Origin: Macrostomum lignano
Taxonomy: Eukaryota
Direction of reading: 5' to 3'
Assembly (NCBI GenBank): GCA_002269645.1
Contig: NIVC01002586.1
Coordinates: forward strand, 1 to 33,815
DNA: 33,815 nucleotides
Positions 1,195 through 29,400 of the stretch are shown here, piece by piece (within the stretch, counting starts at the first letter, position 1; each line of letters starts with the position of its first letter). A program made the translations under genes and the position numbers. The notes under the pieces are model-generated. The model was not told the DNA's origin. It did not search any database and worked only from the letters and a program-made list of their open reading frames with translations.

Positions 1195-2696
1195 ATGAGT
1201 CATCAAAGCAGCGCAGATTAGCCAAGTTCTGGCGCAGCCTCCGCAAAATGCTCCATCTGCAACCAATCCGCAGTTGGTGTAGGTCCATTGTCAGGCTGTC
1301 ACCTCTGCGACCGGCATCTTGAATTAGATGTGTCTCAAAAAGTGAAACTAGTTGTTGCTGAGCAGAGGCGCGCCTACTTGCGAGAGAGGCAAAATCCAGG
1401 TGCAACCAGCAGTGCATCAAATGCAACGGAACCAGAATCTGAAGTTGCGCGTTTGCGCCGGGAAATCTGTCGGAATCTGTTGCGGGTGAATCACAGATTC
1501 GATTTGGTACAGCAAGGCGTCGAATCGTTACGTGGCAGGGTGACGGGCCAGCTTGAAGGTCTGCTCGGGCAGTGCAAAATGAACAGCAGCAGGCAGCTGA
1601 TACTCATAATTTGGTGGAGCTGTTTGAGTTAATGCAGTCTATGAATGTTCCGCATGCTAGTTTAGATACAAGCTTTGAGACTAATTCGCTTGGAGAGCAA
1701 ACTAACGAGTTGAAACTGCAGCTGCGGCTTCTAGGACAGCTCGAGCGGCTGGTTGGTATTTTTTCAGGGCGCAATGAATTTCACGTTGAATTGGAGGCGA
1801 GCAGATCCTACACGAGCGAGGTGAAGCTCAATGGTCTTATTGAGTGGCTGGCTGTGTGCAGCGACACCAGCGGATTCTTTGGTGACCCGTCAGGCCGTGT
1901 GGTTCGCGGAAATTCTGTTAATCAAGAAAATGTGCCTCTGTCTCAGCCATGCGTCTTTGCGCTAATAAATCATTTAGAGGATCATCTTCTAGTGGTCTCG
2001 CTAGACGGCTCACAGAAGCTGCGGTGCTACTGTGACCTACAAGACTGGAATGGCAACATCTGCGGCCTTCACTGCGACCGTCAGCTGCTGTTCATTGCTC
2101 AGAATGACACAGTGACAGTGACGGACTTGAGCGGTCGCGCATTGCGTCAAATTCGTCCAGACATCGAGAGCTTCGGCAAAATTAATGGAATCGGCGGCGA
2201 CGCAGCCTCCGTGTTTGTGTCCAGTGGAAACAAAATTGCTGCATTCAGCAAAGCGACTGGTCAGATGGAGACGGTCATCACGCTGTCTCAGCTTCCTCAT
2301 GCTGATCTGGGAAATCTGACGACTCACGACAACTGCATTTTGGTGACAGACTGGAATGCACATCAAGTGCACAGAGTGCGCATCGACACTGAACAGCTGG
2401 TCGCCTCACTGCCGAATCCAAGTGGCAATATTCGTCAGTTTGGTCACCTTAAAGATGTGGCCGTCGACCGGAGAGGCCGGCTATTCATTAGTGAATGGAA
2501 GGGTCACTCAGTGCGAGCTTTGACTGTTGACGACGGGTTGCTGCTGTGGTCTATGGGGACTCCTGGCGAGAGCGGCCGCGGCGAGGGCAGCCTTGAATAT
2601 CCTTGCGGTCTGTCAATGCTGACGGATAGTCATTGCGAGCGTCTTGTGATAGCTGACTATTATCACAGCCGATTGCTGATTGTTAATGTTCATTAA
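1195..2696 (+). pseudogene. NHL-1: intronless Zn-finger (reduced B-box-like)/coiled-coil/NHL-repeat gene, disrupted (in-frame TAG at 1219-1221; 1-nt deletion near 1567-1569)
   Basis: ATG at 1195 reads MSHQSSAD*PSSGAASAKCSICNQSAVGVGPLSGCHLCDRH, collinear with NHL-2 MSRRSSSDSSS...CIICDQAAVGVAPFSRCHMCSQH. ORFs 1288..1632 and 1572..2696 join through a frameshift (ctg ctc ggg ca gtg versus paralogue gtg ctt gag gca gtg). The C-terminal part has NHL-type motifs (DVAVDRRGRLFISE, LEYPCGL, LVIADYYHSRL). Confidence 0.75.
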
Positions 2697-4650: not shown

Positions 4651-4708
4651 AAGACAGTTGCATATTATCATTCACACTTAATTCTTTGAAACTTTATGCA
4701 GCGTGAAG

Positions 4709-8335: not shown

Positions 8336-8451
8336 TTGGACTCTTTAATTAACTTTTTATTGTCCCGATGTTCAACGCTTCTATTCAATGTTTCTGCGCA
8401 TCATGAAAGTCTTATGCTTCCTTACTTGTATGGAACATTCTTTTAACGATT

Positions 8452-9879: not shown

Positions 9880-10925
<1,046 letters not shown>

Positions 10926-11001
10926 ATTACAGGTGTACCCAATTTCAGTGTTTTAAGTGTAAATTACACTCACATCATCACCTTGATGCCCCAGCTCAGT
11001 A

Positions 11002-11692: not shown

Positions 11693-11730
<38 letters not shown>

Positions 11731-12409
11731 GCATGGATTGATTGATTGATTGATTGATGGATTGATTGGTGGATAGATACATAGATAGATAGATGGATTG
11801 ATACCAGTAAAATGGCCTCTATGCATCAGGAAATAAGATAAGTACGCTCATATTATTCACTTTAATTTCGGGTCACACTGATACACTGATTCTCCTACTA
11901 TAAGTAGAAATACAAGCATTTTATTGTTGATTTCCCAAACCAGAGAGTACGGTGTCGGCCACTATCGATTCTCAGTTGACGCCGCGGAGCGAGCCGAGCA
12001 GCTGGCCGCGCTGAACAGGCGCACCGAGCAGACTGAACTGGCTAAGCGGCGCCGAGTCGAGGCGCTTGAGAAACGGCGCGACGCTGCCGCAGCCAGGCTC
12101 GAGCGCGTCAGACAACGGCGCGGCATCGCTGCGCCGGCGCCTTCGATGACGTCATCGTCAACTGACGCCGAGGAGGCGCCGCCAGCAATTCCCGAAGAAA
12201 TTGTTGTTGTTGAGCAACAAATCGAACAAGGAATCAAAGAGATTCGACGACAGGTGGAAGCTGAAACTAAAGCCGAATCGGCGTTGTCACCATGGCAACA
12301 ACGACAACGACAGGTTCAGCCTCGTCAGCGCCTCCCTGTGGCTAGTTTCAGACCACCAGCGGCAGCAGCAATGGAAGATAGAAACCCTGAGTTTGCTCCT
12401 CCCTACTAA
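11002..12409 (+). CDS. CCDC174: CCDC174-like coiled-coil protein, 332 aa; exons 11002-11534, 11944-12409
   Basis: Motifs KAALYE, LVDF, HF..VEYDESREYGVGHYRF and a K/R-rich helix match recalled CCDC174 motifs (KAKLYE, LVDF, HY..IRENEAR.LGVGYFAF). The phase-2 intron 11535-11943 (GTAAGA..CAG) keeps the frame. Confidence 0.8.
11590..11803. repeat. (GATT)n/(GATA)n degenerate microsatellite in the CCDC174 intron
   Basis: Read directly. Confidence 0.9.
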
Positions 12410-12932: not shown

Positions 12933-14591
12933 ATGAGCCGCAGAAGCTCCAGCGACAGCTCGAGTTTGGAAGCGCCTCCCGCTACCCCAACTCCTCTCTG
13001 CATCATCTGCGACCAAGCTGCAGTCGGTGTGGCTCCGTTCTCCCGCTGCCACATGTGCAGTCAACACCTCAGTGTCGATGTGGCCAATCTATTCAAGCTC
13101 AAGGAAGAGGTCGAAGAGCTGCTGCTTGCCTACTCACAAGAGTCACAAGACTCACAAGAGTCACAAGACTCACAAGGCGCAGCAGGTGCAGCTAGCCGTG
13201 CAGCGCTGCTGCGACACCGACAAGACGCTGAGTCGCTGCGTCGTCTCGCTCTCGACATCCAACAGCAGCTGCAAGAGGTCAATCACAAATTCGATTTGGT
13301 ACAGCAAAACATCGACTCGTTTCGTAGCAAGGTGACGGGCCAGCTCTCAGGTGTGCTTGAGGCAGTGCGTGTGTGCGAGCGGGACCTCGAGGACGTCTCC
13401 AGCTACAAGCAGGAGGTGGCCACGGCGGAGGCTGCAGGCGACATGGCGGAGCTGCTTCGCCTGGTCCAGTCCATGCACGAATCGCTTGGAGACTTGGAGG
13501 CCGACTTTGAGAGGTCAGAGCGCCTGCTCAGAGAACAGAGCGACAATGAGGAGCTGCAGCTGCGGCTTCTGGGCCAGCTCGAGCGGCTGGTCGGCATTTG
13601 TGCGGGACGCAGCGAAGAGGTCGACTGGTCGAGAGACGTTGCGGTGACCGCGACATCCGATAAGATAGACAGAAATATAGCTGCTGAGAGAGAGAGAATG
13701 TTGGAGCCGATGGTCTTCAGTCACGAGGTGAAGCTGGATGACCGTGTTGAATACCTGGCTGTGTGCAGCGACACCAGTGGATTCGTTTGTGACCGCTCAG
13801 GCCGTGTGGTTCCCGCGGACTCAGAGGGAGACGGCAGCGAGGCTCTGCCTCAGCCCTGCATCCTTGCATCATTCTATCACAGCAGAGACCACCTACTGGT
13901 GCTGTCTGTGGACGGCACACAGAAGCTGCGGTGCCACTGCGATATCGACTGGATGAAAGACATCCGTGGCCTTTACTGCGACCGTCAGCTGCTGTTCATT
14001 GCTCAGCGAGATGCCGTGGCAGTGACGGACCTGAGCGGTCGCGCGGTGCGTCGAGTCCGCCCACACATCGAGGGCTTCGCTGACATCAGGGGAATCGGAG
14101 GCAACGCAGCCTCCGTGTTTGTGTCCAGTGGAAACAAAATTGCTGCATTCAGCAAAGCGACTTGGGAGATCGAGACAGTCATCACGCTGTCTCAGCTTCC
14201 TGATGCTTATTTGCGGAACCTGACGACTCACGACAACTGCATCCTGGTGACAGACAGAAGGCACCATCAGGTGCACAGAGTGCGCATCGACACCCAGCAG
14301 CTGGTCGCCTCCCTTCCAAGTGCCCGTTCTGATCTTTGTCAGCCATGGGACGTGGTAGTTGACAGGAGAGGCCGCCTGTTCGTAAGTGAGCACTATGCTC
14401 ACTCAGTGCGAGCTTTGGCTGCAGACGACGGGTCGCTGCTGTGGACTCTGGGGACTCCGGGCAAGAGCGGCAGCGGAGACGGCAAACTTGGATATCCCTG
14501 TGGTCTGGCGGTGGTGACGGGAGGTCCGCACGAGCAGCTGGTGGTGGCTGACTGTGGCAGTCGTCTTGTATTTTTGAGCTTGTCAGATTAA
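12933..14591 (+). CDS. NHL-2: intact intronless Zn-finger (CxxC-x12-CxxCxxH)/coiled-coil/NHL-repeat protein, 552 aa; TRIM-NHL-like without a RING
   Basis: The ORF is open from ATG 12933, which follows the pyrimidine tract/AG tatttttcag. It contains CIIC..CHMCSQH, a long helical L/E/Q/R-rich region, and NHL-type repeats (PWDVVVDRRGRLFVSE; G.G.G.LGYPCGLAV; LVVADCG.RL). Confidence 0.85.
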   Translation: MSRRSSSDSSSLEAPPATPTPLCIICDQAAVGVAPFSRCHMCSQHLSVDVANLFKLKEEVEELLLAYSQESQDSQESQDSQGAAGAASRAALLRHRQDAESLRRLALDIQQQLQEVNHKFDLVQQNIDSFRSKVTGQLSGVLEAVRVCERDLEDVSSYKQEVATAEAAGDMAELLRLVQSMHESLGDLEADFERSERLLREQSDNEELQLRLLGQLERLVGICAGRSEEVDWSRDVAVTATSDKIDRNIAAERERMLEPMVFSHEVKLDDRVEYLAVCSDTSGFVCDRSGRVVPADSEGDGSEALPQPCILASFYHSRDHLLVLSVDGTQKLRCHCDIDWMKDIRGLYCDRQLLFIAQRDAVAVTDLSGRAVRRVRPHIEGFADIRGIGGNAASVFVSSGNKIAAFSKATWEIETVITLSQLPDAYLRNLTTHDNCILVTDRRHHQVHRVRIDTQQLVASLPSARSDLCQPWDVVVDRRGRLFVSEHYAHSVRALAADDGSLLWTLGTPGKSGSGDGKLGYPCGLAVVTGGPHEQLVVADCGSRLVFLSLSD

Positions 14592-16888
14592 ATGATGCAC
14601 GGGTTTATTAAGCAAATATTAAGGCAAATTCACTAGTCAGGACTGCATTAGCTGCTGTGCAAACAGTAGGTCAAAATCTAAGCAAATCAAACAGCTTTTT
14701 TCCGTAAACTTTTTGAAACTGTCTGCTGACACTTCAACTCAAGTGATTGAAAGAGCTTAACCATTTTCACCGCATTTTTACCTCTTGATATTCAAATATA
14801 TTTTTCTGTAACATTAAACATACTGTTTGCTAATTAGAAGTACACATGGATTTTCACGAAGTAAGTATTCTTGTGACTTTATCTTTAGCATCGAGCCTGA
14901 GACTTCGATGGCGACTTTCTATTTGTAGGGGTGTCGCAAGGGTTCTGTGTGCACCCTGGCGAACTTCAAGCGACATTGTCACACAACCGGCAAGAGGCAT
15001 TGCTGCCCATTCCGCCGACCCCCTGAGCAGGCACACAAGCGCGCGGATACGTACGCAGTCGTACGCACAGGCACACACTCACACAGGAGTGTACAGCGGC
15101 TCTAACTTTATTTATCGTTAGGCATGTACACTTCCCTTTGCCTTGTGGGTTGGCCCTTAAGGCCGTTAATTGCACGAGCAGAGCCAAGCCGAGATTCCAA
15201 TTTAGCCACAAATTAATGTGACTGCATCTGGAATCGAGGCCTGGGCCGCTGGCACATCAGAGCGCCGCGCGAGATCACTGGTTTGCAATGCGTATGGTTA
15301 TGCGTAACACCAAACCAACGCAATTTGAAAGCTTGTTATTGTCGAGGTCGCACTAAGGCGCAGTGCTGATTGGCGCATAGGGGCTGTACAATAGCGCTTA
15401 TAGATTATGGAGAGAATCGTTGAATATCTCGTCGGTCCGGAGGGCTGGCGGTCGACTTAGTTCTTGTTTGAGAAGGTGGGCAACACAAAGTTTGAGAACT
15501 TGCAGCTGAAGTCAGTGAACGCTTACTTGTATCGGCTCTTCATCTCTCTCTTCTCTCTTCTTCCATCTCGTCTCTTTTTATTCCTCCTTTCCTCTCACAA
15601 ATATCTGGTCCATAGCCACTATCTAGATTATTTATCTGGCCTTTCAGGTAAGCCTCTGGGGTAGAACTACACGAGATTTTTTATTAGTAAATTCAGGATG
15701 CAGTAAGTACATTAAAATTGGTAGTTTTGTGCTTTTTCAACTAAGGGCAATCTTTAAGATCAAGTTACTTTTTGTAGCAGAGATCAACGCTTTGTCTGTA
15801 AAATCGCCCCTGAAATACAGACTATAGACTATAGACAATCGCTCGATAATATATTGATTATTATATTGATGAGGACGCACTTTTTTCCAAACTTCACGCT
15901 CGCACATGGGCTCCAAACTTAAAACTCCAAGGTTTCAGTGGACCAATGGCAAGGCGGTTCTCAGTCGATCAATCTATCAAATCAGTGAGCAAAATTGTCA
16001 ATAGTGCAAAATCGGCGCTAAAGATGTACTCTGTGCACTCTAGGTTTGCCAAGCGGCTCGGGTAATGAATCATGCGGTCTCCGATGTTCGAGTTAGCCTA
16101 TCATCAGCGCTATGAGAGGCTAGTTGGCGCGTTGACGGCCAAAATTACAATTCCTCGTATTTAGCAATGTAATAGTACATGTAGTATAGCTACCCCATAG
16201 ACTCGCCACTGCAAGAATCCCCTGCACAAGTCCCCTCTGTACCTGCATGGCCAATGCGATCAAGTCCCAGCAGTGTCCCTTATCATCGACTATGACTTCG
16301 AGATTGACAAGCAAAAAGACACTAGTTGGCAGGTAAGTGCAAAGCCCCCTCTAGTCGGAAGCCCGATTTCGAAAGTTCCGGTTTGGTGAGCCAGGACGTA
16401 CGGGATATGGTGGCAGCGGGTTAGTTAATCTGCGGATTAGCTGATCTCTACCTTCAAAATTCTCCCTGCTTGTCTCTCGCTGTGCCTCTCTTAGCTATAG
16501 GACCTAGACTGCTCGCCACAAGATCAAGCTACCATGGGGCTGACCATCTGACAGGAGTGGAGGGCCAGGACTCTAATTGATTTATTTCTGAGACCTGAGG
16601 CCCGAAGGCTTCCACAAAGGGGCCGAAAAGGCCGAAACCCATCAATATTCTCAAGTAATATGACTAGATATTGCTGGTCAGCATTTTCAAACTAGCATGG
16701 TGTGCCCATGCGTTAGCAGGCAAGGTTATAGACTTAATTCTGCCACTGGGATTCCACTTAAACTTAATACTACTCATTTATAGCTATTAGTCTACGAGTA
16801 TAGTACTAGCAACACTAGCAATCTCGAACTCCCGTTTTGAAGGAGTACTTCGTAGAACTTCACTACAGTATGGTTACTATTTAATAAA

Positions 16889-16992
16889 CATCAAAACGCA
16901 TCAGTACACACTGAGGCAGATCAAAACACGTCAGGACACACCGAGGCACATCAAAACACATCAGGACACACTGAGGCACATCAAAAAACACC
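16889..16992. repeat. 30-nt unit x ~3.4 (CATCAAAACACATCAGGACACACTGAGGCA)
   Basis: Three degenerate copies plus a partial copy, read directly. Confidence 0.75.
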
Positions 16993-17526
16993 ATGTCCTG
17001 CAGGAAACACTGAAACACTTAGCCACGTAACTGTACAAGCATTGGCGTGGCGCCTTGGCGCCCAGGGCTACCACTCTACGAATGAAACGCCCTAAATTGA
17101 AATGGTGCAGTTTCAACTGCACATACAAAATTTGCCCCACGAAACGCAGACGTCACCCGTAGAAAAACCCTGGGCATGCACCACGGCTACTGCTGGACAT
17201 CCATTAGGACAAGTTCCTCCCCCCTAAAGTTGCTTTCCATAATCGCTGTGCATGCAACTACATGTAAACGAATTCAATGCCTGCGAGCCATTTTGGGGCT
17301 GCTGCAAATCGATCAAAACTTCTATACCAATATTTTTCAAAGTCGGACTCACATGCACTTCTCCCAGCAGACCGAAGCCCTGTGTATCGGGAGTCGGAAT
17401 ACATTTATGCATAAGCCAGCTCGTAACGGCAAGCAACTTTGAACCTTGCAGCCTACGTCATTAAGAATTGTTATAGCCGCTTCAGATCTTGCTCGCTGCA
17501 GCCCTCAATTATATCGCTTAGCAACG

Positions 17527-20056
17527 ATGAGTCTCTTTACGCTTCTAACCGCAATCTTTCTGACAGCATTCGTTCAGGCCTCGATGACGGCTAAGAGTGA
17601 GTTCTCAAATGCACCCATAAATGTTCTATAGGCTACATAATTATTTAATAATAATAATATTCACTGAGCTGAGGCAATTCTGCCCATTCTGCTGACTCCT
17701 AAGCATACAACTGTAAACAAAAACTTGTACATGTAGCTCTTCTTTCGAGAATTATATAACATACTACCGCAAGAAACTGCATCCTTTTCCTTTCATTCAC
17801 TGTCCGAATTTTCTAGTTGCTGGTCAACGCTGCGAGGCCAAATCGTTCGTTTACGATCGTCGGCACGAGAGCACACGCGGACATCACTGCGAGTTTGGTA
17901 ATTGGTGACCATTCTGCTGGGGTTTGAGGTGTCTTCGTGGCGTACGCCAGACAGATAAACTATGATCAGTAACTGAGGAAATCTGCTGTTACTATGTGTA
18001 TTGCGATGCAGTGGTAATTCTTAATCCTCCCCGCAGCTCCCCAGAACTGGTGGCGAATCAGCGAAGCCTGCAAGGATCTCCGCAAGAACCGACCGTCTCC
18101 CATCAGCATCCCACTGGGAGTCTGCAAGACTAAGTCCAAAAACTTGAAAAACATCACGCTTGGACGGGGCTGGTCTCGCGAAAGAGATTTTATCGTTAAA
18201 AATAACGGGCATTCAAGTGAGTTATTATCGTGTTCTGTTCCTTCTACTACTCTTAGTAGGCGGTTAAAGAAAATATTGCATAACTGCACAGTATTTTATA
18301 AAAAAGCAAATTTCGTGTCAATTGCTAACCTGCCTGCTCACAAATCACCTGTCTGCTCACAAATCACCTGTCAGTGCTCACAAATCACCTGTCAGTGCTC
18401 AGAAATCACCTGTCAGTGCTCACAAAGCACCTGTCTGCTCACAAATCACCTGTCAGTGCTAAAAAATCACCTGTCAGTGCCCACAAATCACCCGTCAGTG
18501 CTCACAAAACACCTGTCAGTGCTCACAAATCACCTGTCAGTGCTCACAAATCACCTGTCAGTGCTAAAAAATCACCTGTCAGTGCTCACAAATCACCTGT
18601 CAGTGCTCACAAATCACCTGTCAGTGCTCACAAAACACCTGTCAGTGCTCACAAGGCAACTCCCACACCATCTACCCTCTCCACAGTCCAAGCAGACGCG
18701 GTGGACGGTGCCGACCTGACGGTGACGGGAGGCCACCTGAAAGGCACCTACAGCTGCATCCAGTTCCACTTCCACTGGGGCAGCCGGGCCAACATGGAGA
18801 AGGGCATCGGCAGCGAGCATCGGCTGGTTGACGCGGCCGGCAAGGAGGTGCCGACGCCTCTGGAGGTGCACATCGTGTGCAAGCGGCGGGAGCTGAGCGT
18901 CAAACAGGCTGTCAGCACCCCAGACGCCATCGCTGTGCTGGGGGGCTTCATCCAGCCCATGAAGGTGAGGCTCTGGTTCTGTTCACTCCAGCGTGTATAT
19001 GAGTGCTCAGGTTCGATTCTGTGCTCAAATAGAAAGATCTCACACAGAGTGTACAGCAGCCTTCACTTTCTAATCGTCAGGCATGTTTAAGTAACTAAAA
19101 TTACTCAACTAAAGTACATTTTCAGCTCGTAATATATCCCTAATTGATTCCAGCCCACAGAGGAAGACACCTGGGCTGATTACGCAATTTCCCAGGTGCT
19201 GGGCTACATGACGGGACTGCTGAAACCTGTGGAGCACGGAGCCGCGGTGTCTCACGAAGGTTAGTCTGTCAAGCAGGGAAATAATTATCAAAAATGTATT
19301 TTAATTGTCATTTAACCGAGAGACAGGTAGACAATGTATTTGTCCACGACTGATATGCTAGAATGCATAAACACCCGGCAAACTTAAAGGCAGTCTTTAC
19401 TTAGCTCATACGTAGTCAATGAGCAGTCAATGAGCAGTCAATGAGCAGTCCATCTCAAGCCCTCCCACTTGCCTCTGCAGATGCACCGACAGTGCAGCTG
19501 CAGCTCCGCGACCTTCTGCCCGACAACCTCCAGCGGTTCGTGAACTACGATGGAGCCTTCACCACCCCTGGCTGCAACCCGGTGGCGCAGTGGCATCTCT
19601 TCACCGACATGATGAAGATCCGCAAGGAGCTGGTGAGAACTCGATATTGATCAGGCTGTAGATCAGGCTGTAGATCAGGCTGTAGATCAGGCTATAGATC
19701 AGGCTGTAGATCAGGCTATAGATCAGGCTGTAGATCAGGCTGTAGATCAGGCTATAGACCAGGCTGTAGATCAGGCTATAGATCAGGCTATAGATCAGGC
19801 TATAGATCAGGCTATAGATCACGCTGGTGATCAGGCTATAGATCAGGCTATAGATCAGACTGTAGATCAGGCTACAGATCAGGCTATAGATCAGGCTATG
19901 GATCAGGCTCACATGAAACCCCCCGAACCTCTCCAGCTGTTGCAGTTCACAACGGCTTTTTTTGACAAAGCCAAGACTCGCCCGATGGTGAACAATTTCC
20001 GCCCCGTGATGAGCCGGCACGGCCGAGAGATTCGCTGCAGCTTCGGCAACATTTAG
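17527..20056 (+). CDS. CA-A: secreted alpha-carbonic anhydrase, 328 aa; exons 17527-17596, 17817-17897, 18037-18216, 18687-18964, 19154-19259, 19481-19632, 19937-20056
   Basis: It has a hydrophobic signal-like N-terminus and the alpha-CA motifs P.NW, SPI.I, NNGHS, QFHFHWG, GSEH, EVHIV, Y.G.FTTP.C and NNFRP. The six GT-AG introns are phase-consistent (987 nt). Confidence 0.92.
18335..18655. repeat. 21-nt minisatellite (AAATCACCTGTCAGTGCTCAC), CA-A intron 3
   Basis: Tandem copies read directly; same unit as 24672-24988. Confidence 0.93.
19648..19910. repeat. 10-nt minisatellite (TAGATCAGGC), CA-A intron 6
   Basis: Tandem copies read directly. Confidence 0.93.
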
Positions 20057-20490
20057 AAGCGGCCGAGGGCTTCGAATGTTGTCTCCGGCTGAATTAATTT
20101 AAAGTACACTGAGGATAAAGTGACTGAACTCTGACAGAATTATGAGGTTTCTGTTTTACACTTTCCGGGTTTTTCGGAGTCATTTTTGTTATACTGTTAA
20201 GAAAAATGTTTATTTTAGTTTCGAAGTCTTTTTTGTTTTACTATTTAGAAAAATATCCGGTTTCAGGACGCGCGAAAATTTGAAACGATTTAAACAGCTC
20301 TTCCTGATTGTGTTGATGGGTTTATTCTAATTAACTGAGTCGTTTTTCATCGTTGTCTGTTTCTTTATTCTTTAGCATTATGTCCACCCACCGACAAGTG
20401 GTGTCATTGGTGGTTTAGCAACGTGTGAAGTAGGCACAAGCAGGCAGAAGTGCCGTTAAATTTCGTGGCATTGGGGACGCCATTTTGCTT

Positions 20491-20663
20491 AAATGGGTGT
20501 GAGTTTGTTTGAATGGGTGTGAATTTGTTTTAATGGGCGTGAATTTGTTTGAATGGGCGTGAATTTGTTTGAATGGGCGTGAATTTGTTTGAATGGGCGT
20601 GAATTTGTTTGAATGGGCTTGAATTTGTTTAAGTTGGCGTGAATTTTTTTAAATAGGCGTGAA
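20491..20663. repeat. 20-nt minisatellite (GAATTTGTTTGAATGGGCGT) abutting the NHL-3 truncation point
   Basis: About 8 copies read directly. Confidence 0.9.
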
Positions 20664-21983
20664 TTGGTACAGCAAAACATCGACTCGTTTCGTAGCAGAG
20701 TGACGGGCCAGCTCTCAGGTGTGCTTGAGGCAGTGCGTGTGTGCGAGCGGGACCTCGAGGACGTCTCCAGCTACAAGCAGGAGGTGGCCACGGCGGAGGC
20801 TGCAGGCGACATGGCGGAGCTGCTTCGCCTGGTCCAGTCCATGCACGAATCGCTTGGAGACTTGGAGGCCGACTTTGAGAGGTCAGAGCGCCTGCTCAGA
20901 GAACAGAGCGACAATGAGGAGCTGCAGCTGCGGCTTCTGGGCCAGCTCGAGCGGCTGGTCGGCATTTGTGCGGGACGCAGCGAAGAGGTCGACTGGTCGA
21001 GAGACGTTGCGGTGACCGCGACATCCGATAAGATAGACAGAAATATAGCTGCTGAGAGAGAGAGAATGTTGGAGCCGATGGTCTTCAGTCACGAGGTGAA
21101 GCTGGATGACCGTGTTGAATACCTGGCTGTGTGCAGCGACACCAGCGGATTCGTTTGTGACCGCTCAGGCCGTGTGGTTCCTACTGACTCAGCGGGAGAC
21201 GGCAGCGAGGCTCTGCCTCAGCCCTGCATCCTGGTATCATTTCTTATCAACAGAGACCACCTGCTGGTGCTGTCTGTGGACGGCTCACAGAAGCTGCGGT
21301 GCCACTGCGACATCGACTGGAAGAAGGAAATCTGGGGCCTTCACTGCGACCGTCAGCTGCTGTTCATTGCTCAGCATGACGCAGTGACAGTGACGGACCT
21401 GAGCGGTCGCGTGGTGCATCGAGTCCGCCCACACAACGAGGGCTTCGCTGACATCAGGGGAATCGGCGGCAACGCAGCTCGAACGCAGTTTCCACTGGTG
21501 TTTGTGTCCAGTGGAAACAAAATTGCTGCATTCAGCAAAGCGACTTGGCAGATGGAGACGGTCATCACGCTGTCTCAGCTTCCTCATGCTCGACTGGGTA
21601 ACCTGGCGACTCACGACAACTGCATTCTGGTGAGAGACTGGATGCACAATCAGGTGCACAGAGTGCGCATCGACACCCAGCAGCTGGTCGCCTCCTTCCC
21701 GACTCAGCGTTCCGGCCTCCAACACTTTTCTATGCCACTGGATGTGGCCGTCGACAGCAGAGGCCGCCTGTTCGTGAGTGAACATTGGGGTCACTCAGTG
21801 CGAGCGGTGGCTGCAGACGACGGGTCGCTGCTGTGGACTCTGGGGACTCCGGGCGAGAGCGGCAGCGGAGACGGCAGATTCGACGGGCCATGGGGTCTGG
21901 CGGTGGTGCCGGGAGGTCCGTGCGAGCAGCTGGTGGTGACTGACCTTTTCAACAGCAGACTGCAGGTGTTCAGTGCACCCTAA
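20664..21983 (+). CDS. NHL-3: coiled-coil/NHL-repeat paralogue, 5'-truncated (lacks the Zn finger and the start of the coiled coil); start uncertain, may be a pseudogene
   Basis: Homology to NHL-2 begins abruptly at 20664 (equivalent to 13296), directly after a 20-nt minisatellite. The frame stays open to TAA at 21981-21983. Confidence 0.65.
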   Translation: MVQQNIDSFRSRVTGQLSGVLEAVRVCERDLEDVSSYKQEVATAEAAGDMAELLRLVQSMHESLGDLEADFERSERLLREQSDNEELQLRLLGQLERLVGICAGRSEEVDWSRDVAVTATSDKIDRNIAAERERMLEPMVFSHEVKLDDRVEYLAVCSDTSGFVCDRSGRVVPTDSAGDGSEALPQPCILVSFLINRDHLLVLSVDGSQKLRCHCDIDWKKEIWGLHCDRQLLFIAQHDAVTVTDLSGRVVHRVRPHNEGFADIRGIGGNAARTQFPLVFVSSGNKIAAFSKATWQMETVITLSQLPHARLGNLATHDNCILVRDWMHNQVHRVRIDTQQLVASFPTQRSGLQHFSMPLDVAVDSRGRLFVSEHWGHSVRAVAADDGSLLWTLGTPGESGSGDGRFDGPWGLAVVPGGPCEQLVVTDLFNSRLQVFSAP

Positions 21984-22570
21984 TTTTATTCACAGGCCGA
22001 ATATTAATCGAACTGTGGGATTTCTTGAGTGATTGATTTCTTGGAGGCCGGGTTTTTGTTCGAGTTTTTTACATTGTGGAATTTTTACATGTTATGACCT
22101 TTTTTGTCTGATAATTGTTTATCGTGTCCAGCATATTCAGAATTGATATTTATTGAATAGAAGCACATTAAACATTATGCATGTATTCAGTAATTACATT
22201 AAACTTACGTTGGCCCTTAACACTTCTTTCATTGTTTTTCTTTTTCTAGAAGTTTCAGCACCAGAAATTGGGACTTGACTGTTGAATTGAATTTCAGCAA
22301 AAGTGGCATGCAGTTTACTTAAATTCTCTGCACTCGCTGCAGACTCAGCTCTCGCTTCTGTGTTGCATTTTCCTCAGTGGTTCACTGCTTTGTGTTTTAT
22401 ATGCATGGGCACAGGCATTCTTATCTGGGAAATCATTGTTAAAATATAAGCTTTGGAAAGTTGAAATTGATGGCACAACTGCTAAACATGCAAACTTCAA
22501 TTAAGGATGGGGATCTGTGATGGGATCTGATTCTTTCAACTAAAGGGCTGCATGAGCATAGTGGGATGTA

Positions 22571-22886
22571 GCACCAAGGTGCGCCAGGACCAAGGGGCGC
22601 CAGCACCAAGGGGCGCCAGCACCAAGGGGCGCCAGCACCAAGGGGCGCCAGCACCAAGGGGCGCCAGCACCAAGGGGCGCCAGCACCAAGGGGCGCCAGC
22701 ACCAAGGGGCGCCAGCACCAATTGGGGCGCCAGCACCAAGGGGCGCCAGCACCAAGGGGCGCCAGCACCAAGGGGCGCCAGCACCAAGGGGCGCCAGCAC
22801 CAAGGGGCGCCAGCACCAAGGGGCGCCAGCACCAAGGGGCGCCAGCACCAAGGGGCGCCAGCACCAAGGGGCGCCAGCACTAAGGG
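22571..22886. repeat. 16-nt GC-rich minisatellite (GCACCAAGGGGCGCCA)
   Basis: About 19 copies, intergenic; explains four overlapping ORFs at 22439-22899. Confidence 0.95.
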
Positions 22887-23411
22887 CTACTAAATACACG
22901 ACCTGTTATATAGTAAGTTTTCATCTGTAGCAGAGCAAAGCTGAGCTAACATTGTTAACAGCCAATGCCAACATCAAAATAGTTCTGTTGAGTCTATAAG
23001 AACTTCATATCTGAAGCTTTAATAGAAAATGTCGTGTCGTGAATGTACACTGATGCGTACACCACTTGCAGGACATACATAGATGACTGCATTGGCTTTG
23101 TAGGCCAGCCTTCCAATTTAGCCCTAAAGATTAAGCTTTATTTAATCTTCGTCAGGTGGCTCCAGCCAAAACTAACTTCACTAACTTGCATGTACATCAC
23201 TGAACGATGCACTTTTAGCTTTCAGTGCACTAGACAAAACTAGGTGTGTTCAAATTTTAGACCAATCAAGTTTGCATGTACGTTCGTAATTAGGCCAATT
23301 TGGAAAGATTTATATATAGCTAGCTTTGCGAATTTCATTGTGACCATCAAGTGAATATCAGTATTAGAGTCTATACAGAAAGGCCAGCTTCTACAGTGTT
23401 CTGCACCAAGC

Positions 23412-26400
23412 ATGACTCACCACTGTGTGCTGCTGACAGCTGCTCTTCTGACAGCATGCGTTCACCTCTCTGTGGCTGGAATTTGTGAGTTTTCAGGCAG
23501 GCTGTAGATCAGGCTATAGATCAGGCTGGAGATCAGGCTGTAGATCCGGCTATAGATCAGGCTATAGATCAGGCTGGAGATCAGGCTGTAGATCCGGCTA
23601 TAGATCAGGCTGGAGATCAGGCTGTAGATCAGGCTATAGATCAGACTGGAGATCAGGCTGTAGATCAGGCTATAGATCAGGCTGTAGATCAGACTGTAGA
23701 TCAGACTATAGATCAGGCTATAGATCAGGTTATAGATCAGACTATAGATCAGGCTGTAAATCAGACTGTAGATCAAACTGTAGATCCGGCTATAGATCAG
23801 GCTATAGATCAGGCTGTAGATCAGGATGTATAGATCAGGCTGTAGATCAGACTGTAGATCAAACTGTAGATCAGGCTATAGATCAGGCTGTAGATCAGGC
23901 TGTAGATCAGGCTATAGATCAGGCTATAGATCAGGCTATAGATCAGGCTATAGATCAGGCTGTAGATAAGGCTGTAGATCAGGCTGTATGAATCAGACTG
24001 TAGATCAGGCTATAGATCAGGCTATAAAATCAGGCTGTAGATCAGACTATAGATCAGGCTATAGATCAGGCTATAGATCAGACTATAGATCAGACTATAG
24101 ATCAGGCTATAGATCAGGCTGTAGAACAGGCTATAGATCAGGCTATAGATCAGGCTATAGATCAGGCTATATAGATCAGGCTGTAGATCAGGCTATAGAT
24201 TAGGCTATAGATCAGGCTATAGATCAGGCTATATATCAGGCTATTGATTACGCTACCACCTTCATTCCCTGATTTCAGTTGCCCAGCGCCTTCGCTGCAC
24301 TTTTCAAACCTTTGTTTACGAGCACGAGCACATTCGAGTCCAGCGATGCGAGTTTGGTGAGACCCGATTTGAGCTTTTCCAACTAATCCTAATCTCCATT
24401 CTAGCCAATGTTTCTCAACTGACCATGCACAGCTCCGCAGAGCTGGTGGCAGATGAGCCATCACTGCAAAGATCTCCCAGAGAACCGGCCGTCGCCCATT
24501 AGAATGGAGCTGTCACTCTGCCAGAGCGAGTCGGTCCAGTTGAAGCCCATCGAGCTGGGAGGCGGCTGGAGCGAAAATAGAAAGTTTGTTGTGTGGAATA
24601 ACGGGCATTCAAGTGAGTTCGTTGGTTTCCTGTAAAATTGCTCGGAATGTACTTAAGATCTGACAGTCGAAAGCACCTGTCAGTGCTCAAAAATCACCTG
24701 TCAGTACTCACAAAGCACCTGTCAGTGCTCACAAATCACCTGTCAGTGCTCACAAATCACCTGTCAGTGCTCACAAATCACCTGTCAGTGCTCACAAATC
24801 ACCTGTCAGTGCTCACAAATCACCTGTCAGTGCTCACAAATCACCTGTCAGTACTCACAAATCACCTGTCAGTGCTCACAAAACACCTGTCAGTGCTCAC
24901 AAATCACCTGTCAGTGCTCACAAAGCTACCTGTCAGTGCTCACAAATCACCTGTCAGTGCTCACAAAACACCTGTCAGTGCTCACAAGGCAACTCCCACA
25001 CCATCTACCCTCTCCACAGTCCAAGCAGACGCGGTGGACGGTGCCGACCTGACGGTGACGGGAGGCCACCTGAAAGGCACCTACAGCTGCATCCAGTTCC
25101 ACTTCCACTGGGGCAGCCGGGCCAACATGGAGAAGGGCATCGGCAGCGAGCATCGGCTGGTTGACGCGGCCGGCAAGGAGGTGCCGACGCCTCTGGAGGT
25201 GCACATCGTGTGCAAGCGGCGGGAGCTGAGCGTCAAACAGGCTGTCAGCACCCCAGACGCCATCGCTGTGCTGGGGGGCTTCATCCAGCCCATGAAGGTG
25301 AGGCCCTTGTTGTTGAATTGAGTCAACTGACGGAGCGCCATTTCATTTGAGGGGGCGCCATTTCATTTGAGGGGGCGCCATTTCATTTGTTGGGGGCGCC
25401 ATTTCATTTGAGGAGGCGCCAATTTTATTCGGGGGCGCCATTTCATTTGAGGGGTTCCATTTCATTTGAGGGGGTGCCATTTCATTTGAGGGGGCGCCGT
25501 TTCACTTGAGGGGGCGCCGGTATCCGGGGCTAACTATACATGCACTGCAAGGGGTGTCGCCAGTCGTCATTAAAATTCCTTCATTTCCAGCCCGCAGACA
25601 ACGAGACGTTGGCTGACTATGCTATTTCCGAATTGTTGGCCAACATCACGGGACTGCTGATACCTATGAAGCGCGGACCGCACTCGGGGCGCCAGCTTCG
25701 GGATGAAGGTAATGCCTGTTGGATGAAGCTGATTGGTTAAGTGGCAGCTGAGCAGCTCAGCGCTTTTTGATGAACGACCCATGAGCAGTCCATCTCAAGC
25801 CCTCCCACTTGCCTCTGCAGATGCACCGACAGTGCAGCTGCAGCTCCGCGACCTTCTGCCCGACAACCTCCAGCGGTTCGTGAACTACGATGGAGCCTTC
25901 ACCACCCCTGGCTGCAACCCGGTGGCGCAGTGGCATCTCTTCACCGACATGATGAAGATCCGCAAGGAGCTGGTGAGGGTCTCGCTTTTGAAGCTGTAGA
26001 TCAGGCTAGATCAGGCTGTAGATCAGACTATAGATCAGGCTATAGATCAGGCTATAAATCAGACTTTAGATCAGGCTATAAATCAGACTGTAGATCAGGA
26101 TATAGATCAGGCTATAGATCAGGCTATAGATCAGGCTATAGATCAGGCTTTAGATCAGGCTATAGATCAGGCTATAGATCAGGCTGTAGATCAGGCTATA
26201 GATCAGACTATAGATCAGGCTATAGATCAGGCTATAGATCATGTTATACATGTAGATCAGACTATAGATGAGGCTCACATCAACCCCCGCACCTCTCCAG
26301 CTGCTGCAATTCACAACGGTCTTCTTCGACAGAGCCAAAACTCACCCGATGGTGAACAATTTCCGCCCCGTGATGAGCCGGCACGGCCGAGAGATTCGCT

Positions 26401-26420
26401 GCAGCTTCGGCAGCAGTTAG
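23412..26420 (+). CDS. CA-B: secreted alpha-carbonic anhydrase, 332 aa; exons 23412-23484, 24279-24356, 24433-24612, 25020-25297, 25591-25708, 25821-25972, 26301-26420
   Basis: It has the same exon number, intron phases and motifs as CA-A, with signal-like MTHHCVLLTAALLTACVHLSVAG. The spliced CDS is 999 nt and open. Confidence 0.92.
23498..24245. repeat. 10-nt minisatellite (TAGATCAGGC), CA-B intron 1
   Basis: Tandem copies read directly; same unit as the intron-6 arrays. Confidence 0.93.
24672..24988. repeat. 21-nt minisatellite (AAATCACCTGTCAGTGCTCAC), CA-B intron 3
   Basis: Tandem copies read directly. Confidence 0.93.
25335..25520. repeat. 20-nt minisatellite (GAGGGGGCGCCATTTCATTT), CA-B intron 4
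   Basis: About 9 copies; absent from CA-A intron 4. Confidence 0.9.
25995..26272. repeat. 10-nt minisatellite (TAGATCAGGC), CA-B intron 6
   Basis: Tandem copies read directly. Confidence 0.93.
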
Positions 26421-29400
26421 AAGCGGCTGCAGATTGGGGCCTCAAAATTCAATTCCTGTGCTTCGAGGTTTTCTATTTACACTAAAATATTTCCTAATTC
26501 AACTGTTTGCTTTCGTTAATTTTGACTGAACTACAAGTCATATTAAAATATTTAACTACTAGCACAAATCGTTTATAATATAAAATTGCGCGAAAAATAA
26601 AAAATTTCGGTATTTATACAAAGAATAAAAAATTTTGGTTGCGCGGGTAGCTAATGTTAATTTTGTGGATTCAACAAACATATAGCTTTGATTTTTCATG
26701 TACGCATGCAATGCGCATATCATGGATGTAAAATATGAAAGCTTCGGAAGAGAAATCATACAAGAAAATAGCTGCATGCATGTACGATCATTCAAAAAGA
26801 ATAGGGAACTCGATTCTATAATTTGTTGATCAATGCTAAGGCACTGCATAAACGTATCGACTTTTTTGGATCTGAAAACAGAAAAAATATTGATTTTGTT
26901 AATCTGTGGTCCCTACTTTACTGACCCATTTTTAAGAAGCACGGCCGCCTCACGGAAGGTTGTTGACAAATAGTAAGAAAGATGTGTAGCCTGCACTTCA
27001 ATCAATGCTTACGTTAGTGTACCGGCTCTTCAAGACACTATACTTAGTGCGTATTATTTTTTAGAGGACTGAAGCAAACGGCGTCCTGTTGTTAACGATC
27101 AGGGTGCCTACTAGCAGGGCAGGTACATAAGAGCGCGGATCAGTCCTCCTGTTTTGTACTAAAGGAAGTGAGTAGAATGTATACATGTAGCAATAAAAAC
27201 AACCAGCAGAATCAAACGTACATGGACTATATATACTGTATTAAGTACGAGCAACGCGAAGGAAGCATCCTATTAAAGGCATTACGAGTTTTCACGAGTT
27301 TCACACGTAACAAACTCGTAAACACATCGGACACTTTTTCACGTGTTTTTCACGAGTTTTTTTCACGAGTAAATCACGTAATTTTCACGTAAAATCACGT
27401 ACGTAATTTTGTCAAGCGGGCTGGTGGGTCCTCGAGGAGCATAAACTCCGCGGCCACCTGAACCTTGGAACCGCCATTTTCATAGCACAAAGCTTGGGTT
27501 GCATCACAAAGATAGCAGTAACTAGCAATCTAGTGCCCCCCTTCGGGGCGCGCAATAAGCAAGGATCCATTAATCAGGGTCCACAAGTTGGGCTGCAGCT
27601 GTGAGAGATCAATTGCGTCACGCACAGCTCCACAAACAGGTAGGTGAGAGCAAAATATGCGCCCGTGCCACCGAAAACGTACTACATCTCCAAAGCCTAT
27701 TGGATCCCGAATTCCCGGTGGGCTACACTTGGCAGGGTTCCTGGAGCAAGAGGCGTGATCAGGTGGTCCGTTAACACGTACGGTAAGTCTGAACTAAAAT
27801 ATCAGAATCAGGGTTTTTAGCTTTTTAAGTTGAAAACAGTGTCGAATAGCATAACTATACTACCTCTTTTAATCATTTCTAGCTAGTACACGCAAAGTTC
27901 TAGAAGATTCTTTATATTATTTTGTTTCACCCTTTTGATTTCTAATAAAATTCAGCAGCCAGTTTGAACTCACTAAATTCTTTTCAAAATTTATGTTCGC
28001 TTTTAAAATTAAATATTGCTCAAAGCAAAGCTCATCTATAGACTATATATATAATATATCCCATAGGCATAGACATATAGGCTTTTCATATGACCGATTC
28101 CAGAACCAGAATCTGTTACGTTCCGTTCCGTTGTCTGTTCCGTTTTCAGAATCGGTTCCAGAACCGTGATCCGATTCTGGAATTTGGATCGAGAAATTTT
28201 CTCGATCCGTTGTCATGTTTACACTTTAACAGTAAAATATATTTGAAATCGTCAATTTTTTATTATTGGTATATAATTATTTTGTTTTTTTTGTCATATC
28301 CTAGAGGAAACAAAGTCAAGCAAGGATAGGCATCATAGGCCTAGACAAAATTAAATTGTAAGTAAAGACTGACAAACATAAAATGGCTTCGAAGCTTTTC
28401 ATTTTCCTAGGGGCCTTCCAATTCTCGTTCTAGAACCGATATTCGTGAAAAGCCGAATAGGCCATATATTATACGTATATACCTGTATCTTAATCTTACC
28501 TTATCTCAATATTTACCATGACCATGTGATCGACATTGTTGTAGACCTATGAGTAAAATGATGACACCTTTCTTTCAAGGTGTCTACTTGACCTATCTAG
28601 TCAAGTCAAGTTACTCAACTTACTCATAGGCCTATAATAAAAAGTTATAGTAATTTTAGTGTCATTTTTGATCATTGCATACATAATAGAATGCCATTTT
28701 CCCATCCATGACCATGGGCATAAAGCATTGCGATCATTTTTGCAAAAGTTCCTATTTTCCAAGGTCTGGATCATTAGTAGTAGGCCTAAATGCAAAACAA
28801 AAACCCTAACTTGGCAAAAGCCTAAATGTATGCCAGTATACACTAGGCCTATATACCAAAAATATAAATTTTTCCTAATTATATTAGTAAAATAGGCTAT
28901 GTAGCGAAATTTATCCAAACTTTGTTTATTTTTGTTAAATGCCAAGAAAAAAGTAGCATGATTTGGCCTTAGGCCCCAATAAAGAATTTGTAGGTATATG
29001 TCAATATGCATATGCCAACTTTTAATAATCAACATTGTTTTAATTAGGGGTTGGACGTGATCACGATTTCGTAAATTCATGACCATTTTTTCATGATTGT
29101 TATTTTTTTGACACCTGTTTACGATAGTCGTGAATTTCCACTTTATTACATTTTTATTAGAAGTATAACTTTTCTACTTGGTTTACCAAAATATGTGAAC
29201 ACAAATGTGTAAAAGAGTAATAAATTTTAAATTTGTTGACTTGACAGCATTACCAAGTAGCTATTATCAATTTATAAATATTTCTTATCTTGTTTTGTTA
29301 TTTTCAACACTTGTAACTTACGAGCTCAAAATACGTGTATGCAAATATAAATTCACGATCACAATCACGATCACGCCTGACTTTAAAAATTTCACAAAAT

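What the first reader, a model, noticed from the sequence alone, without database searches (positions are those of the whole stretch)
12933..26420. Tandem [NHL + secreted carbonic anhydrase] x2 cassette with patchwork identity
Seen: the order NHL-2, CA-A, NHL-3, CA-B, all on the + strand. The spacers between NHL and CA (14592-17526 versus 21984-23411) show no similarity that I can see, which suggests an old duplication. Yet three internal blocks appear identical between the units: NHL 13332-13777/20700-21145, CA exon 4 and CA exon 6. Inference: a two-gene module that is being homogenised only in structural and catalytic segments while surface segments diversify. This is the best candidate for an undescribed system in the window. 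A functional link between the two gene types is not shown by the sequence.
Basis: partly seen in the sequence, partly recalled or inferred. Interest (0 to 1): 0.72.

Follow-up and report, generated by a model that had tools for sequence, protein, structure and literature searches.

The report
Gene conversion patches between flatworm paralogs
Two old neighbouring gene pairs in the flatworm Macrostomum lignano (NHL-repeat genes alternating with secreted carbonic anhydrases) carry three short, perfectly identical patches that are best explained by ordinary gene conversion between paralogs, not by a new two-gene functional system.

Summary
The order NHL-2, CA-A, NHL-3, CA-B is on the + strand. The spacers share nothing. 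Three blocks are 100% identical: 446, 377 and 197 nt (0 of 100,000 permutations reach these run lengths).

The window is Macrostomum lignano. Both carbonic anhydrases are intact 7-exon secreted-type alpha-CAs.

dS between CA-A and CA-B is 0 in exons 4 and 6, but 0.5-1.3 in exons 1-3 and 5. The identical blocks also cover intron flanks. In a paralogous genome copy (NIVC01000032.1) the same exons differ by 2.5-4.6%. This is therefore sequence homogenisation (interlocus gene conversion), not protein-level selection.

In the NHL genes the homogenised part is the coiled coil, not the propeller.

NHL-3 is 5'-truncated. A 762-nt deletion removed its promoter, ATG and B-box, and the identity tract starts at that junction.

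NHL paralogs elsewhere form arrays without any CA. The only other NHL-CA adjacency is the paralogous copy of this same locus, where CA-A is broken.

dN/dS stays below 1 in the diverged segments.

Verdict: a mosaic of conversion tracts in a lineage-expanded gene family. It is ordinary biology, with an assembly or polishing artefact as the main caveat. Low interest.

The parts
12933..14591 (+). NHL-2: intact single-exon gene (552 aa) with a B-box-like N-terminus, a long coiled coil and a 6-bladed NHL beta-propeller
   Evidence: ORF. Pfam NHL E = 2.9e-5. AlphaFold2 model has helices at 43-227 and a beta-propeller at 261-552. Foldseek TM 0.76-0.77 to the NHL domains of Thin/TRIM32 and TRIM71. It is 78-84% identical to M. 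lignano 'B box-type domain-containing' proteins.
17527..20056 (+). CA-A: 7-exon secreted-type alpha-carbonic anhydrase (328 aa). Exons: 17527-17596, 17817-17897, 18037-18216, 18687-18964, 19154-19259, 19481-19632, 19937-20056
   Evidence: Spliced model with all introns GT-AG and an open frame. Pfam Carb_anhydrase E = 1.4e-45. Zn-binding His residues, Glu106, Thr199 and His64 are conserved in the alignment with CA2.
20664..21983 (+). NHL-3: 5'-truncated NHL paralog (open for 439 codons). It lacks the promoter, ATG and B-box that are present in its counterpart in the paralogous genome copy
   Evidence: Homology to NHL-2 starts at 20661. L003 carries a full-length 585-aa gene here. The window lacks L003 6059-6820, a stretch of 762 nt. 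Pfam NHL E = 9e-9.
23412..26420 (+). CA-B: 7-exon secreted-type alpha-carbonic anhydrase (332 aa). Exons: 23412-23484, 24279-24356, 24433-24612, 25020-25297, 25591-25708, 25821-25972, 26301-26420
   Evidence: Model. The exons match M. lignano A0A1I8GEY2 (P0017) at 100%, apart from one junction residue. Pfam E = 1.9e-45.
13293..13777 (+). Conversion tract 1, copy in NHL-2 (partner 20661-21145). Identity 99.4%, with a core of 446 nt at 100%. It encodes the coiled coil and linker.
   Evidence: dS 0.009 here, against 0.15 and 0.285 further 3'.
20661..21145 (+). Conversion tract 1, copy in NHL-3. It begins exactly at the deletion junction with the 20-bp minisatellite.
18342..18971 (+). Conversion tract 2, copy in CA-A (partner 24670-25304). 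It spans the 21-bp intron minisatellite (93-96% identical) plus 377 nt at 100% (18595-18971) that include exon 4, which carries the Zn ligands.
24670..25304 (+). Conversion tract 2, copy in CA-B
19441..20063 (+). Conversion tract 3, copy in CA-A (partner 25781-26427). The recent core 19441-19637 is 100% identical (exon 6 plus intron flanks). An older part covers the 12-bp intron minisatellite and exon 7 (about 89-91% identical, dS 0.28).
25781..26427 (+). Conversion tract 3, copy in CA-B
20484..20665 (.). 20-bp minisatellite, 9 copies here against about 2.5 in the paralogous copy. It abuts the NHL-3 truncation point.
1288..2696 (+). NHL-1: older paralog (66-76% nt identity to NHL-2 and NHL-3) with no adjacent CA. 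It is frameshifted in a G run near 1567-1569.

Best explanation
The window is a locus of the neopolyploid flatworm Macrostomum lignano. Members of a lineage-expanded, RING-less TRIM-NHL-like family (NHL-1, NHL-2, NHL-3) lie beside two old paralogs of a secreted alpha-carbonic anhydrase (CA-A, CA-B).

The paralogs diverged long ago. Introns, promoters and spacers no longer align, and CA exons 1-3 and 5 are only about 68% identical.

The patchwork of perfect identity comes from non-allelic (interlocus) gene conversion between copies 6.3-7.4 kb apart. There are three recent tracts of about 200-630 nt, laid over older conversions of the CA 3' end and of the NHL 5' half.

Tracts can only start and resolve inside the remaining islands of homology, which are exons and a few shared intron minisatellites. 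They therefore look exon-shaped, and they favour the most conserved (catalytic) exons for a passive reason. Exons that fell below the identity needed for recombination (3 and 5) escape conversion and keep diverging.

For exon 6 the direction was CA-B to CA-A.

The NHL tract begins exactly where NHL-3 lost 762 nt (promoter, ATG, B-box) next to an expanded minisatellite. This suggests a single double-strand-break repair event that copied from NHL-2.

The NHL-CA alternation is a by-product of segmental duplication in a fast-turnover gene family, not a functional module.

Shown: the mosaic, dS = 0 inside the tracts, the phylogenetic incongruence, the truncation, and the gene models.
Inferred: the recombination mechanism, the direction of transfer, the link between the break and the deletion, and the absence of functional coupling.
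For: (1) Mosaic identity is far beyond chance: 0 of 100,000 permutations.
(2) dS between CA-A and CA-B by exon is 0.77, 1.32, 0.80, 0, 0.54, 0 and 0.28. For NHL-2 against NHL-3, dS runs 0.009, 0.15, 0.285 from 5' to 3'.
(3) The identical blocks include 92, 7, 40 and 5 nt of intron, and the homology runs on into intron minisatellites.
(4) The trees disagree by segment when the paralogous copy NIVC01000032.1 (L003) is added.
- Exons 3 and 5: CA-B to CA-B' is 93-97.5%, CA-A to CA-B is 67-69%.
- Exons 4 and 6: CA-A equals CA-B (100%), while both differ from L003 by 2.5-4.6%.
- NHL 3' segment: NHL-3 to L003-NHL is 90.8%, NHL-2 to either is 81-82%.
- NHL 5' block: NHL-2 to NHL-3 is 99.4%, and both are about 95.5% to L003-NHL.
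(5) In L003, CA-A' against CA-B' exons 6-7 are 92.6-93.8% identical. This shows older homogenisation in an independent assembly.
(6) In the intron flank of exon 6 the window sequence carries the B-type states (alignment).
(7) Across the NHL family, dS is 0.04-0.07 in the 5' half and 0.08-0.28 in the propeller.
(8) The deletion and the minisatellite expansion sit at the tract start.
(9) There is no CA in 76 kb of other NHL arrays. The NHL-3 3' flank is shared with those arrays and not with NHL-2.
Against: No reads were available, so exact identity could be inflated by assembly or polishing in a genome where 93% of read pairs map to several loci and chimeric contigs are common (PMC10733133).

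The donor and recipient are unresolved for the NHL tract and for exon 4, because the NHL-2' and CA-A' 5' parts of the paralogous copy could not be fetched.

The closeness of tract edges to minisatellites is not statistically compelling. Arrays cover about 21% of the region, and by my rough estimate, 4 of 6 edges lying near an array is about what chance would give.

No expression data were examined, so functional coupling is not excluded directly.
Confidence: 0.75

Rival explanations
1. Assembly or polishing artefact. The paralogous blocks are truly similar (about 93-97%). They were made exactly identical when short reads or consensus steps mixed reads from CA-A and CA-B, from NHL-2 and NHL-3, or from the three subgenome copies.
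For: M. lignano assemblies are described as prone to collapsed and chimeric sequence, with 93% of read pairs mapping to several loci. The window has a homopolymer frameshift in NHL-1 that could be a sequencing error. In the independent NIVC assembly the corresponding CA-A' and CA-B' exon 6 are 92.6% identical, not 100%.
Against: Even if the 100% figure is inflated, the mosaic remains: about 93% or more identity in some exons against about 68% in others. It is also seen in the other assembly. The flanking minisatellite arrays of the two copies are distinct (93-96% identical, different copy patterns). CA-B exons match an independent protein record exactly.
Confidence: 0.12
2. NHL plus CA is a functional two-gene module, duplicated as a cassette. 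Selection keeps the structural and catalytic segments homogenised while the surface segments diversify.
For: The order is alternating and in one orientation, and it is conserved in the paralogous copy. The identical CA exons do hold the Zn ligands (exon 4) and the Thr199 loop (exon 6). The diverged NHL part is the putative ligand-binding propeller.
Against: - dS = 0 and identical intron flanks cannot come from protein-level selection.
- dN/dS is below 1 in the diverged parts.
- NHL-3 is truncated.
- CA-A' is disrupted in the paralogous copy.
- NHL arrays elsewhere lack a CA.
- The dS values are mismatched: NHL propeller 0.28, CA 0.5-1.3. NHL-3 also has closer kin at other loci. Both argue against one cassette duplication.
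- No literature links the two families in Macrostomum.
Confidence: 0.05
3. Exon-sized copy-and-paste by replication template switching (FoSTeS/MMBIR-type), or recent partial duplication, rather than classical recombinational gene conversion.
For: The homology boundaries are sharp. One tract coincides with a deletion junction and a minisatellite expansion.
Against: The copies are collinear, in phase and replace rather than add sequence, which is the signature of conversion. Sequence alone cannot separate these mechanisms.
Confidence: 0.06
4. Extreme purifying selection on nucleotides in exons 4 and 6 and in the NHL 5' block (for example splicing enhancers or RNA structure).
For: These are the most conserved protein segments.
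Against: The same segments differ by 2.5-4.6% between the window and L003, including at synonymous sites. The intron flanks are identical too.
Confidence: 0.02

Closest known systems
Interlocus (ectopic) gene conversion between tandem paralogs, as in human gamma-globin HBG1/HBG2, RHD/RHCE, the red/green opsins and CYP21A2/CYP21A1P (my own knowledge)
   Same: Short tracts (10^2-10^3 nt) of near-identity sit inside older, diverged duplicates a few kb apart. Synonymous and intronic sites are homogenised. The segment trees conflict with orthology.
   Different: This locus has not been described. Here two unrelated gene pairs, interleaved, each carry tracts. One tract starts at a deletion junction beside a minisatellite.
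TRIM-NHL proteins (Brat, LIN-41/TRIM71, Thin/TRIM32, TRIM2/3)
   Same: A coiled coil followed by a C-terminal 6-bladed NHL beta-propeller. Foldseek TM 0.74-0.77 to the Thin and TRIM71 NHL domains (0.55 to the two-domain Lin41 filamin-NHL chain). Relatives are labelled 'B box-type domain-containing'.
   Different: No RING domain. Pfam does not detect a B-box. Only 16-19% identity in the propeller. The family was found only in M. lignano and a few metagenome contigs, with many paralogs in arrays. RNA binding is untested.
Extracellular alpha-carbonic anhydrases (CA4/CA6-like)
   Same: Full Pfam Carb_anhydrase domain. His94, His96, His119, Glu106, Thr199 and His64 are present. Cysteines sit at the positions of the Cys23-Cys203 disulfide. 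The N-terminus is hydrophobic and signal-like.
   Different: No C-terminal hydrophobic tail for a GPI anchor. About 30-35% identity to non-flatworm CAs.
Lineage-specific tandem expansions of TRIM-type genes with a conserved N-terminal half and a variable C-terminal binding domain, such as fish finTRIMs (my own knowledge)
   Same: Arrays of paralogs. The 5' half is homogenised (dS 0.04-0.07). The C-terminal propeller is more diverged (dS 0.08-0.28).
   Different: dN/dS is about 0.8 or lower, with no demonstrated positive selection. The variable domain is NHL, not B30.2.

Membership tests
alpha-carbonic anhydrase (PF00194) | Full-length Carb_anhydrase domain above the curated cut-off | tested here: met
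   CA-A scores 156.3 bits and CA-B 155.9 bits against a cut-off of 27. Profile positions 3-254 of 254 are covered.
alpha-carbonic anhydrase (PF00194) | Three Zn-binding histidines (His94, His96, His119), plus Glu106, Thr199 and the proton shuttle His64 | tested here: met
   The alignment with human CA2 chains shows QFHFHWG, GSEH, EVHIV, FTTP and NNGHS aligned to the CA2 motifs. The motifs are identical in CA-A and CA-B (alignment).
alpha-carbonic anhydrase, secreted/extracellular subclass | Signal peptide and Cys23-Cys203 disulfide | tested here: inconclusive
   The N-termini are hydrophobic (MSLFTLLTAIFLTAFVQA, MTHHCVLLTAALLTACVHLSVAG). Cysteines align with an A23C/L203C-type CA2 chain, 4pxx. 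No signal-peptide predictor was available.
TRIM-NHL family | C-terminal six-bladed NHL beta-propeller | tested here: met
   Pfam NHL repeat hits at E = 2.9e-5 (NHL-2) and 9e-9 (NHL-3). The AlphaFold2 propeller spans 261-552 with pLDDT mostly 85-94. Foldseek TM 0.76-0.77, rmsd 3.3-4.3, to 6xg7, 6d69 and 8j72.
TRIM-NHL family | Coiled coil upstream of the NHL domain | tested here: met
   The model has helices at 43-76, 84-168 and 171-227.
TRIM-NHL family | N-terminal RING finger | tested here: not met
   There is no RING hit in Pfam, and only about 40 residues lie before the coiled coil. At best this is a RING-less, Brat-like architecture.
TRIM-NHL family | B-box zinc finger | tested here: inconclusive
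   UniProt labels the relatives 'B box-type domain-containing'. Pfam gives no B-box hit for NHL-2. The motif CIICDQ...CHMCSQH is present.
Interlocus gene conversion | Runs of identity longer than expected from the overall divergence (Sawyer-type test) | tested here: met
   0 of 100,000 permutations for both NHL and CA.
Interlocus gene conversion | Synonymous and non-coding sites homogenised inside the tracts | tested here: met
   dS = 0 over about 100 synonymous sites in exons 4 and 6. The intron flanks are identical.
Interlocus gene conversion | Segment trees group paralogs within a genome copy against orthology | tested here: met
Interlocus gene conversion | Tracts confirmed in raw long reads or independent individuals | not testable with these tools
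   There was no read access.
   The adjacency is found only in the paralogous copy of the same locus. At least 10 NHL copies in L001 and L002 have no CA. Other species could not be searched.
   NHL-3 is 5'-truncated in the window. CA-A' in L003 has a retrotransposon in its intron and has lost the exon 6 acceptor.
   No expression data were available. No paper links them.

The most novel reading that the evidence does not exclude
Minisatellite-initiated double-strand breaks may drive exon-sized conversion 'islands' in this genome. On this reading, one repair event both deleted the NHL-3 promoter and 5' coding sequence and copied 485 nt from NHL-2, and conversion from CA-B keeps the otherwise decaying CA-A splice-competent. 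That would make M. lignano's minisatellite-rich introns a general engine of concerted evolution. Less likely still, the NHL and CA genes could be co-regulated partners.
Probability: 0.1. Interest if true: 0.45.

Novelty: new member of a known kind. Interest (0 to 1): 0.2.

Why it matters
It matters mostly as a caution. In a neopolyploid, repeat-rich genome such as M. lignano, patchwork identity between neighbouring paralogs is expected from gene conversion, or from assembly effects. It should not be read as a sign of a functional module.

It also gives clean 7-exon models for two secreted carbonic anhydrases, and it documents a large Macrostomum-restricted, RING-less TRIM-NHL-like family that evolves in concert in its 5' half. 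If read-verified, the locus would be a tidy example of exon-limited conversion, with one tract anchored at a deletion junction.

Tried and rejected
- Exact look-up of the NHL-2 product: no record.
- The 14-kb stretch of NIVC01000032.1 between L004 and L003 could not be fetched, because nothing annotated lies there. It should hold NHL-2' and the 5' exons of CA-A'. The donor for the NHL and exon 4 tracts therefore stays open.
- Pfam on a frame translation given by reference failed because of stop codons. Exons were found instead by tblastn with M. lignano CA proteins.
- Pfam on the listed ORFs of L003 1-4400 found nothing. The retroelement pol runs off the locus end and only appeared in a full-frame translation.
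- Literature searches for Macrostomum with carbonic anhydrase or NHL found nothing relevant.
- Rfam and tRNA scans of the window were empty.
- I considered and rejected positive selection on the diverged segments (dN/dS 0.3-0.7).
- I considered and rejected a single clean cassette duplication. The dS values do not match, and NHL-3 is closer to NHL genes at other loci.
- I considered and rejected a significant link between tract edges and minisatellites. By my rough estimate, the association is about what chance would give.


Full report
**What the window is.**
The sequence is eukaryotic. It has spliced genes and introns packed with minisatellites.
- NHL-2 (12933-14591) finds only Macrostomum lignano proteins, at 78-84% identity. 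These are labelled 'B box-type domain-containing protein'.
- The CA-B exons match M. lignano A0A1I8GEY2 at 100%.
- The window is collinear with GenBank contig NIVC01000032.1 (assembly GCA_002269645.1) from about 527 to 576 kb, at roughly 88-95% nucleotide identity: NHL-1 and the WD40 gene in L004, then CA-A' (exons 6-7 only), NHL, CA-B' and a BTB-Kelch gene in L003. The stretch between L004 and L003, which should hold the DUF4078 gene and NHL-2', was not recovered.
- M. lignano is a recent polyploid with three paralogous subgenome copies, and its assemblies are prone to chimerism (PMC10733133).
- I treat L003 and L004 as a paralogous copy of the same locus.

**Checking the observation.**
- A sensitive BLASTN of unit A against unit B gives five collinear matches:
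  - NHL 13293-14552 with 20661-21944, 91%;
  - CA exon 3, 70%;
  - 18342-18978 with 24670-25311, 96%;
  - exon 5, 78%;
  - 19441-20063 with 25781-26427, 89%.
- The two spacers share nothing better than E = 0.11.
- A base-by-base comparison gives three perfect blocks:
  - 13332-13777 = 20700-21145 (446 nt);
  - 18595-18971 = 24928-25304 (377 nt);
  - 19441-19637 = 25781-25977 (197 nt).
- Shuffling the positions of the differences never reproduces such runs, 0 of 100,000.

**Gene anatomy.**
I used the M. lignano CA proteins as guides to build seven-exon models for both carbonic anhydrases.
- Intron phases are the same in both genes, all introns are GT-AG and both frames are open: CA-A 328 aa, CA-B 332 aa.
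- Both are full alpha-CA domains (Pfam 1e-45). They keep the three zinc histidines, Glu106, Thr199, His64 and the cysteines of the extracellular-type disulfide. Both have hydrophobic N-termini and no GPI-type tail.
- NHL-2 has a short Cys/His-rich N-terminus, about 185 residues of coiled coil, and a confident beta-propeller. The propeller superposes on the NHL domains of Thin/TRIM32 and TRIM71 at TM about 0.76-0.77; the Lin41 filamin-NHL chain scores lower (TM 0.55).
- NHL-2 has no RING. It is therefore TRIM-NHL-like (Brat-like architecture), not a proven member.
- A full HMMER scan shows that full-length relatives are essentially all M. lignano 'hypothetical proteins', in many clusters, plus a few metagenome contigs.

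**NHL-3 is a stump.**
- In L003 the NHL between the two CAs is a full 585-aa gene.
- The window lacks the 762 nt that correspond to L003 6059-6820. That stretch holds the promoter, ATG, B-box and the start of the coiled coil.
- At that point a 20-bp minisatellite has grown from about 2.5 to 9 copies.
- The near-identical NHL block begins exactly at this junction.

**Why the patches are conversion, not selection.**
- dS between CA-A and CA-B is 0.77, 1.32, 0.80, 0, 0.54, 0 and 0.28 for exons 1 to 7.
- For NHL-2 against NHL-3, dS climbs from 0.009 to 0.15 to 0.285 from 5' to 3'.
- Zero differences over about 100 synonymous sites, next to exons with pS of about 0.4-0.6, cannot be due to protein-level constraint.
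- The perfect blocks also take in 92, 7, 40 and 5 nt of intron, and they run on into shared intron minisatellites.
- The same exons are free to vary. They differ by 3.7% (exon 4) and 2.5-4.6% (exon 6) between the window and L003.
- Trees flip by segment:
  - In exons 3 and 5, CA-B groups with CA-B' (93-97.5%), far from CA-A (67-69%).
  - In exons 4 and 6, CA-A equals CA-B.
  - In the NHL propeller, NHL-3 groups with its L003 counterpart (90.8-95.5%), and NHL-2 stands apart (81-90%).
  - In the 5' block, NHL-2 and NHL-3 are 99.4% alike, and both are 95.5% to L003.
- Older homogenisation is visible too. In L003, CA-A' and CA-B' exons 6-7 are about 93% identical. This comes from a different assembly, so the mosaic is not just an artefact of this one.
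- Diagnostic sites in the intron flank of exon 6 show the window carries the B-type sequence. The transfer was therefore from B to A.

**Why the tracts look 'structural and catalytic'.**
The simplest reason is passive. Conversion needs homology on both sides, and introns here share none. Only the best-conserved exons, and a few shared minisatellites, can still recombine. Exons 3 and 5, at about 68% identity, have escaped. In the NHL genes the converted block encodes the coiled coil and linker, while the folded propeller is the diverged part. dN/dS in the diverged segments is 0.3-0.7, so diversifying selection is not shown.

**Is there a two-gene module?**
The evidence points against it.
- At least 10 NHL paralogs in 76 kb of other M. 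lignano loci (L001, L002) have no CA. Glyoxalase genes lie among them instead.
- NHL-1 in the window has no CA.
- The only other NHL-CA adjacency is the paralogous copy of this locus. There, CA-A' has a Ty3/gypsy-type retroelement upstream of exon 6 and has lost that exon's AG acceptor.
- NHL-3 is nearer to the array genes elsewhere than to NHL-2. Its propeller dS is 0.12-0.15 against them and 0.28 against NHL-2, and it shares 430 nt of 3' flank with them but not with NHL-2.
- The unconverted CA exons are far older (dS 0.5-1.3) than any NHL segment. A single cassette duplication is therefore not required by the data.
- Family-wide, the NHL 5' half has dS 0.04-0.07 even between loci, so concerted evolution is a property of the family.

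**Caveats.**
- Without reads I cannot exclude that perfect identity is partly a polishing effect. I give that 12%.
- The donor is unresolved for two tracts.
- Tract edges lie near minisatellites, but arrays cover about a fifth of the region, so this is not significant by my rough count.
- No expression data were available, and no paper addresses these genes.

**Verdict.**
The 'undescribed system' is not supported. This is a new example of a well-known process in a lineage-expanded gene family.

Noticed in passing
window 1560-1575 (NHL-1, 1288-2696): NHL-1 has GGG where the paralogous copy has GGGG. This shifts the frame between ORFs 1288-1632 and 1572-2696. It is either a pseudogene or a homopolymer error in the assembly.
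   Followed up: partly
window 3015-3466 and 30646-31633: Two insertions with long terminal inverted repeats (156-nt arms, 90% and 97% complementary). Both are absent from the paralogous copies L004 and L003, so they look like foldback/MITE-like elements that differ between subgenome copies.
   Followed up: partly
L003 1-4400 (minus strand): A Ty3/gypsy-order retroelement pol (protease, RT, RNase H, integrase) lies directly upstream of CA-A' exon 6 in the paralogous copy. That exon's acceptor AG is also mutated (CAG to CTG).
   Followed up: partly
window 19645-19909, 23498-24248, 25993-26241; L003 4748-5432, 10087-11533, 13564-13758: The same 12-bp minisatellite (unit about TATAGATCAGGC) occupies three different CA introns: CA-A intron 6, CA-B intron 1 and CA-B intron 6. 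The same holds in the paralogous copy. It is either a mobile or recurrent array, or it was spread by conversion.
   Followed up: no
window 9764-10950: A microsatellite-like array of about 1.2 kb (8/12-nt period, 130 registered copies). It has extreme strand asymmetry (GC skew 0.76, GC 27%) and lies between the WD40 gene and the DUF4078 gene.
   Followed up: no
window 4703-8335: A Seh1/Sec13-like WD40 gene. Its introns are almost wholly minisatellites with periods of 23, 16/32, 21 and 32 nt, and a 20-nt array (8392-9460) follows directly downstream of the gene. The arrays are conserved as arrays, but not in copy number, in L004.
   Followed up: no
L001 (NIVC01000200.1 280-334 kb) and L002: A tandem array of at least 8 NHL paralogs at about 6-kb spacing. 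Several are frameshifted or truncated. Duplicated glyoxalase genes lie between them on the opposite strand.
   Followed up: partly
window 21984-22415: The 3' flank of NHL-3 is 81-87% identical to the 3' flanks of NHL genes in L001 and L002, but unrelated to the NHL-2 3' flank. This ties NHL-3 to the dispersed array lineage.
   Followed up: partly
window 11002-12409 and 32466-32879: Neighbouring genes: a two-ORF gene with a DUF4078 domain (E = 1.8e-9), and the first exon of a BTB-Kelch gene (BTB E = 1.9e-13).
   Followed up: partly
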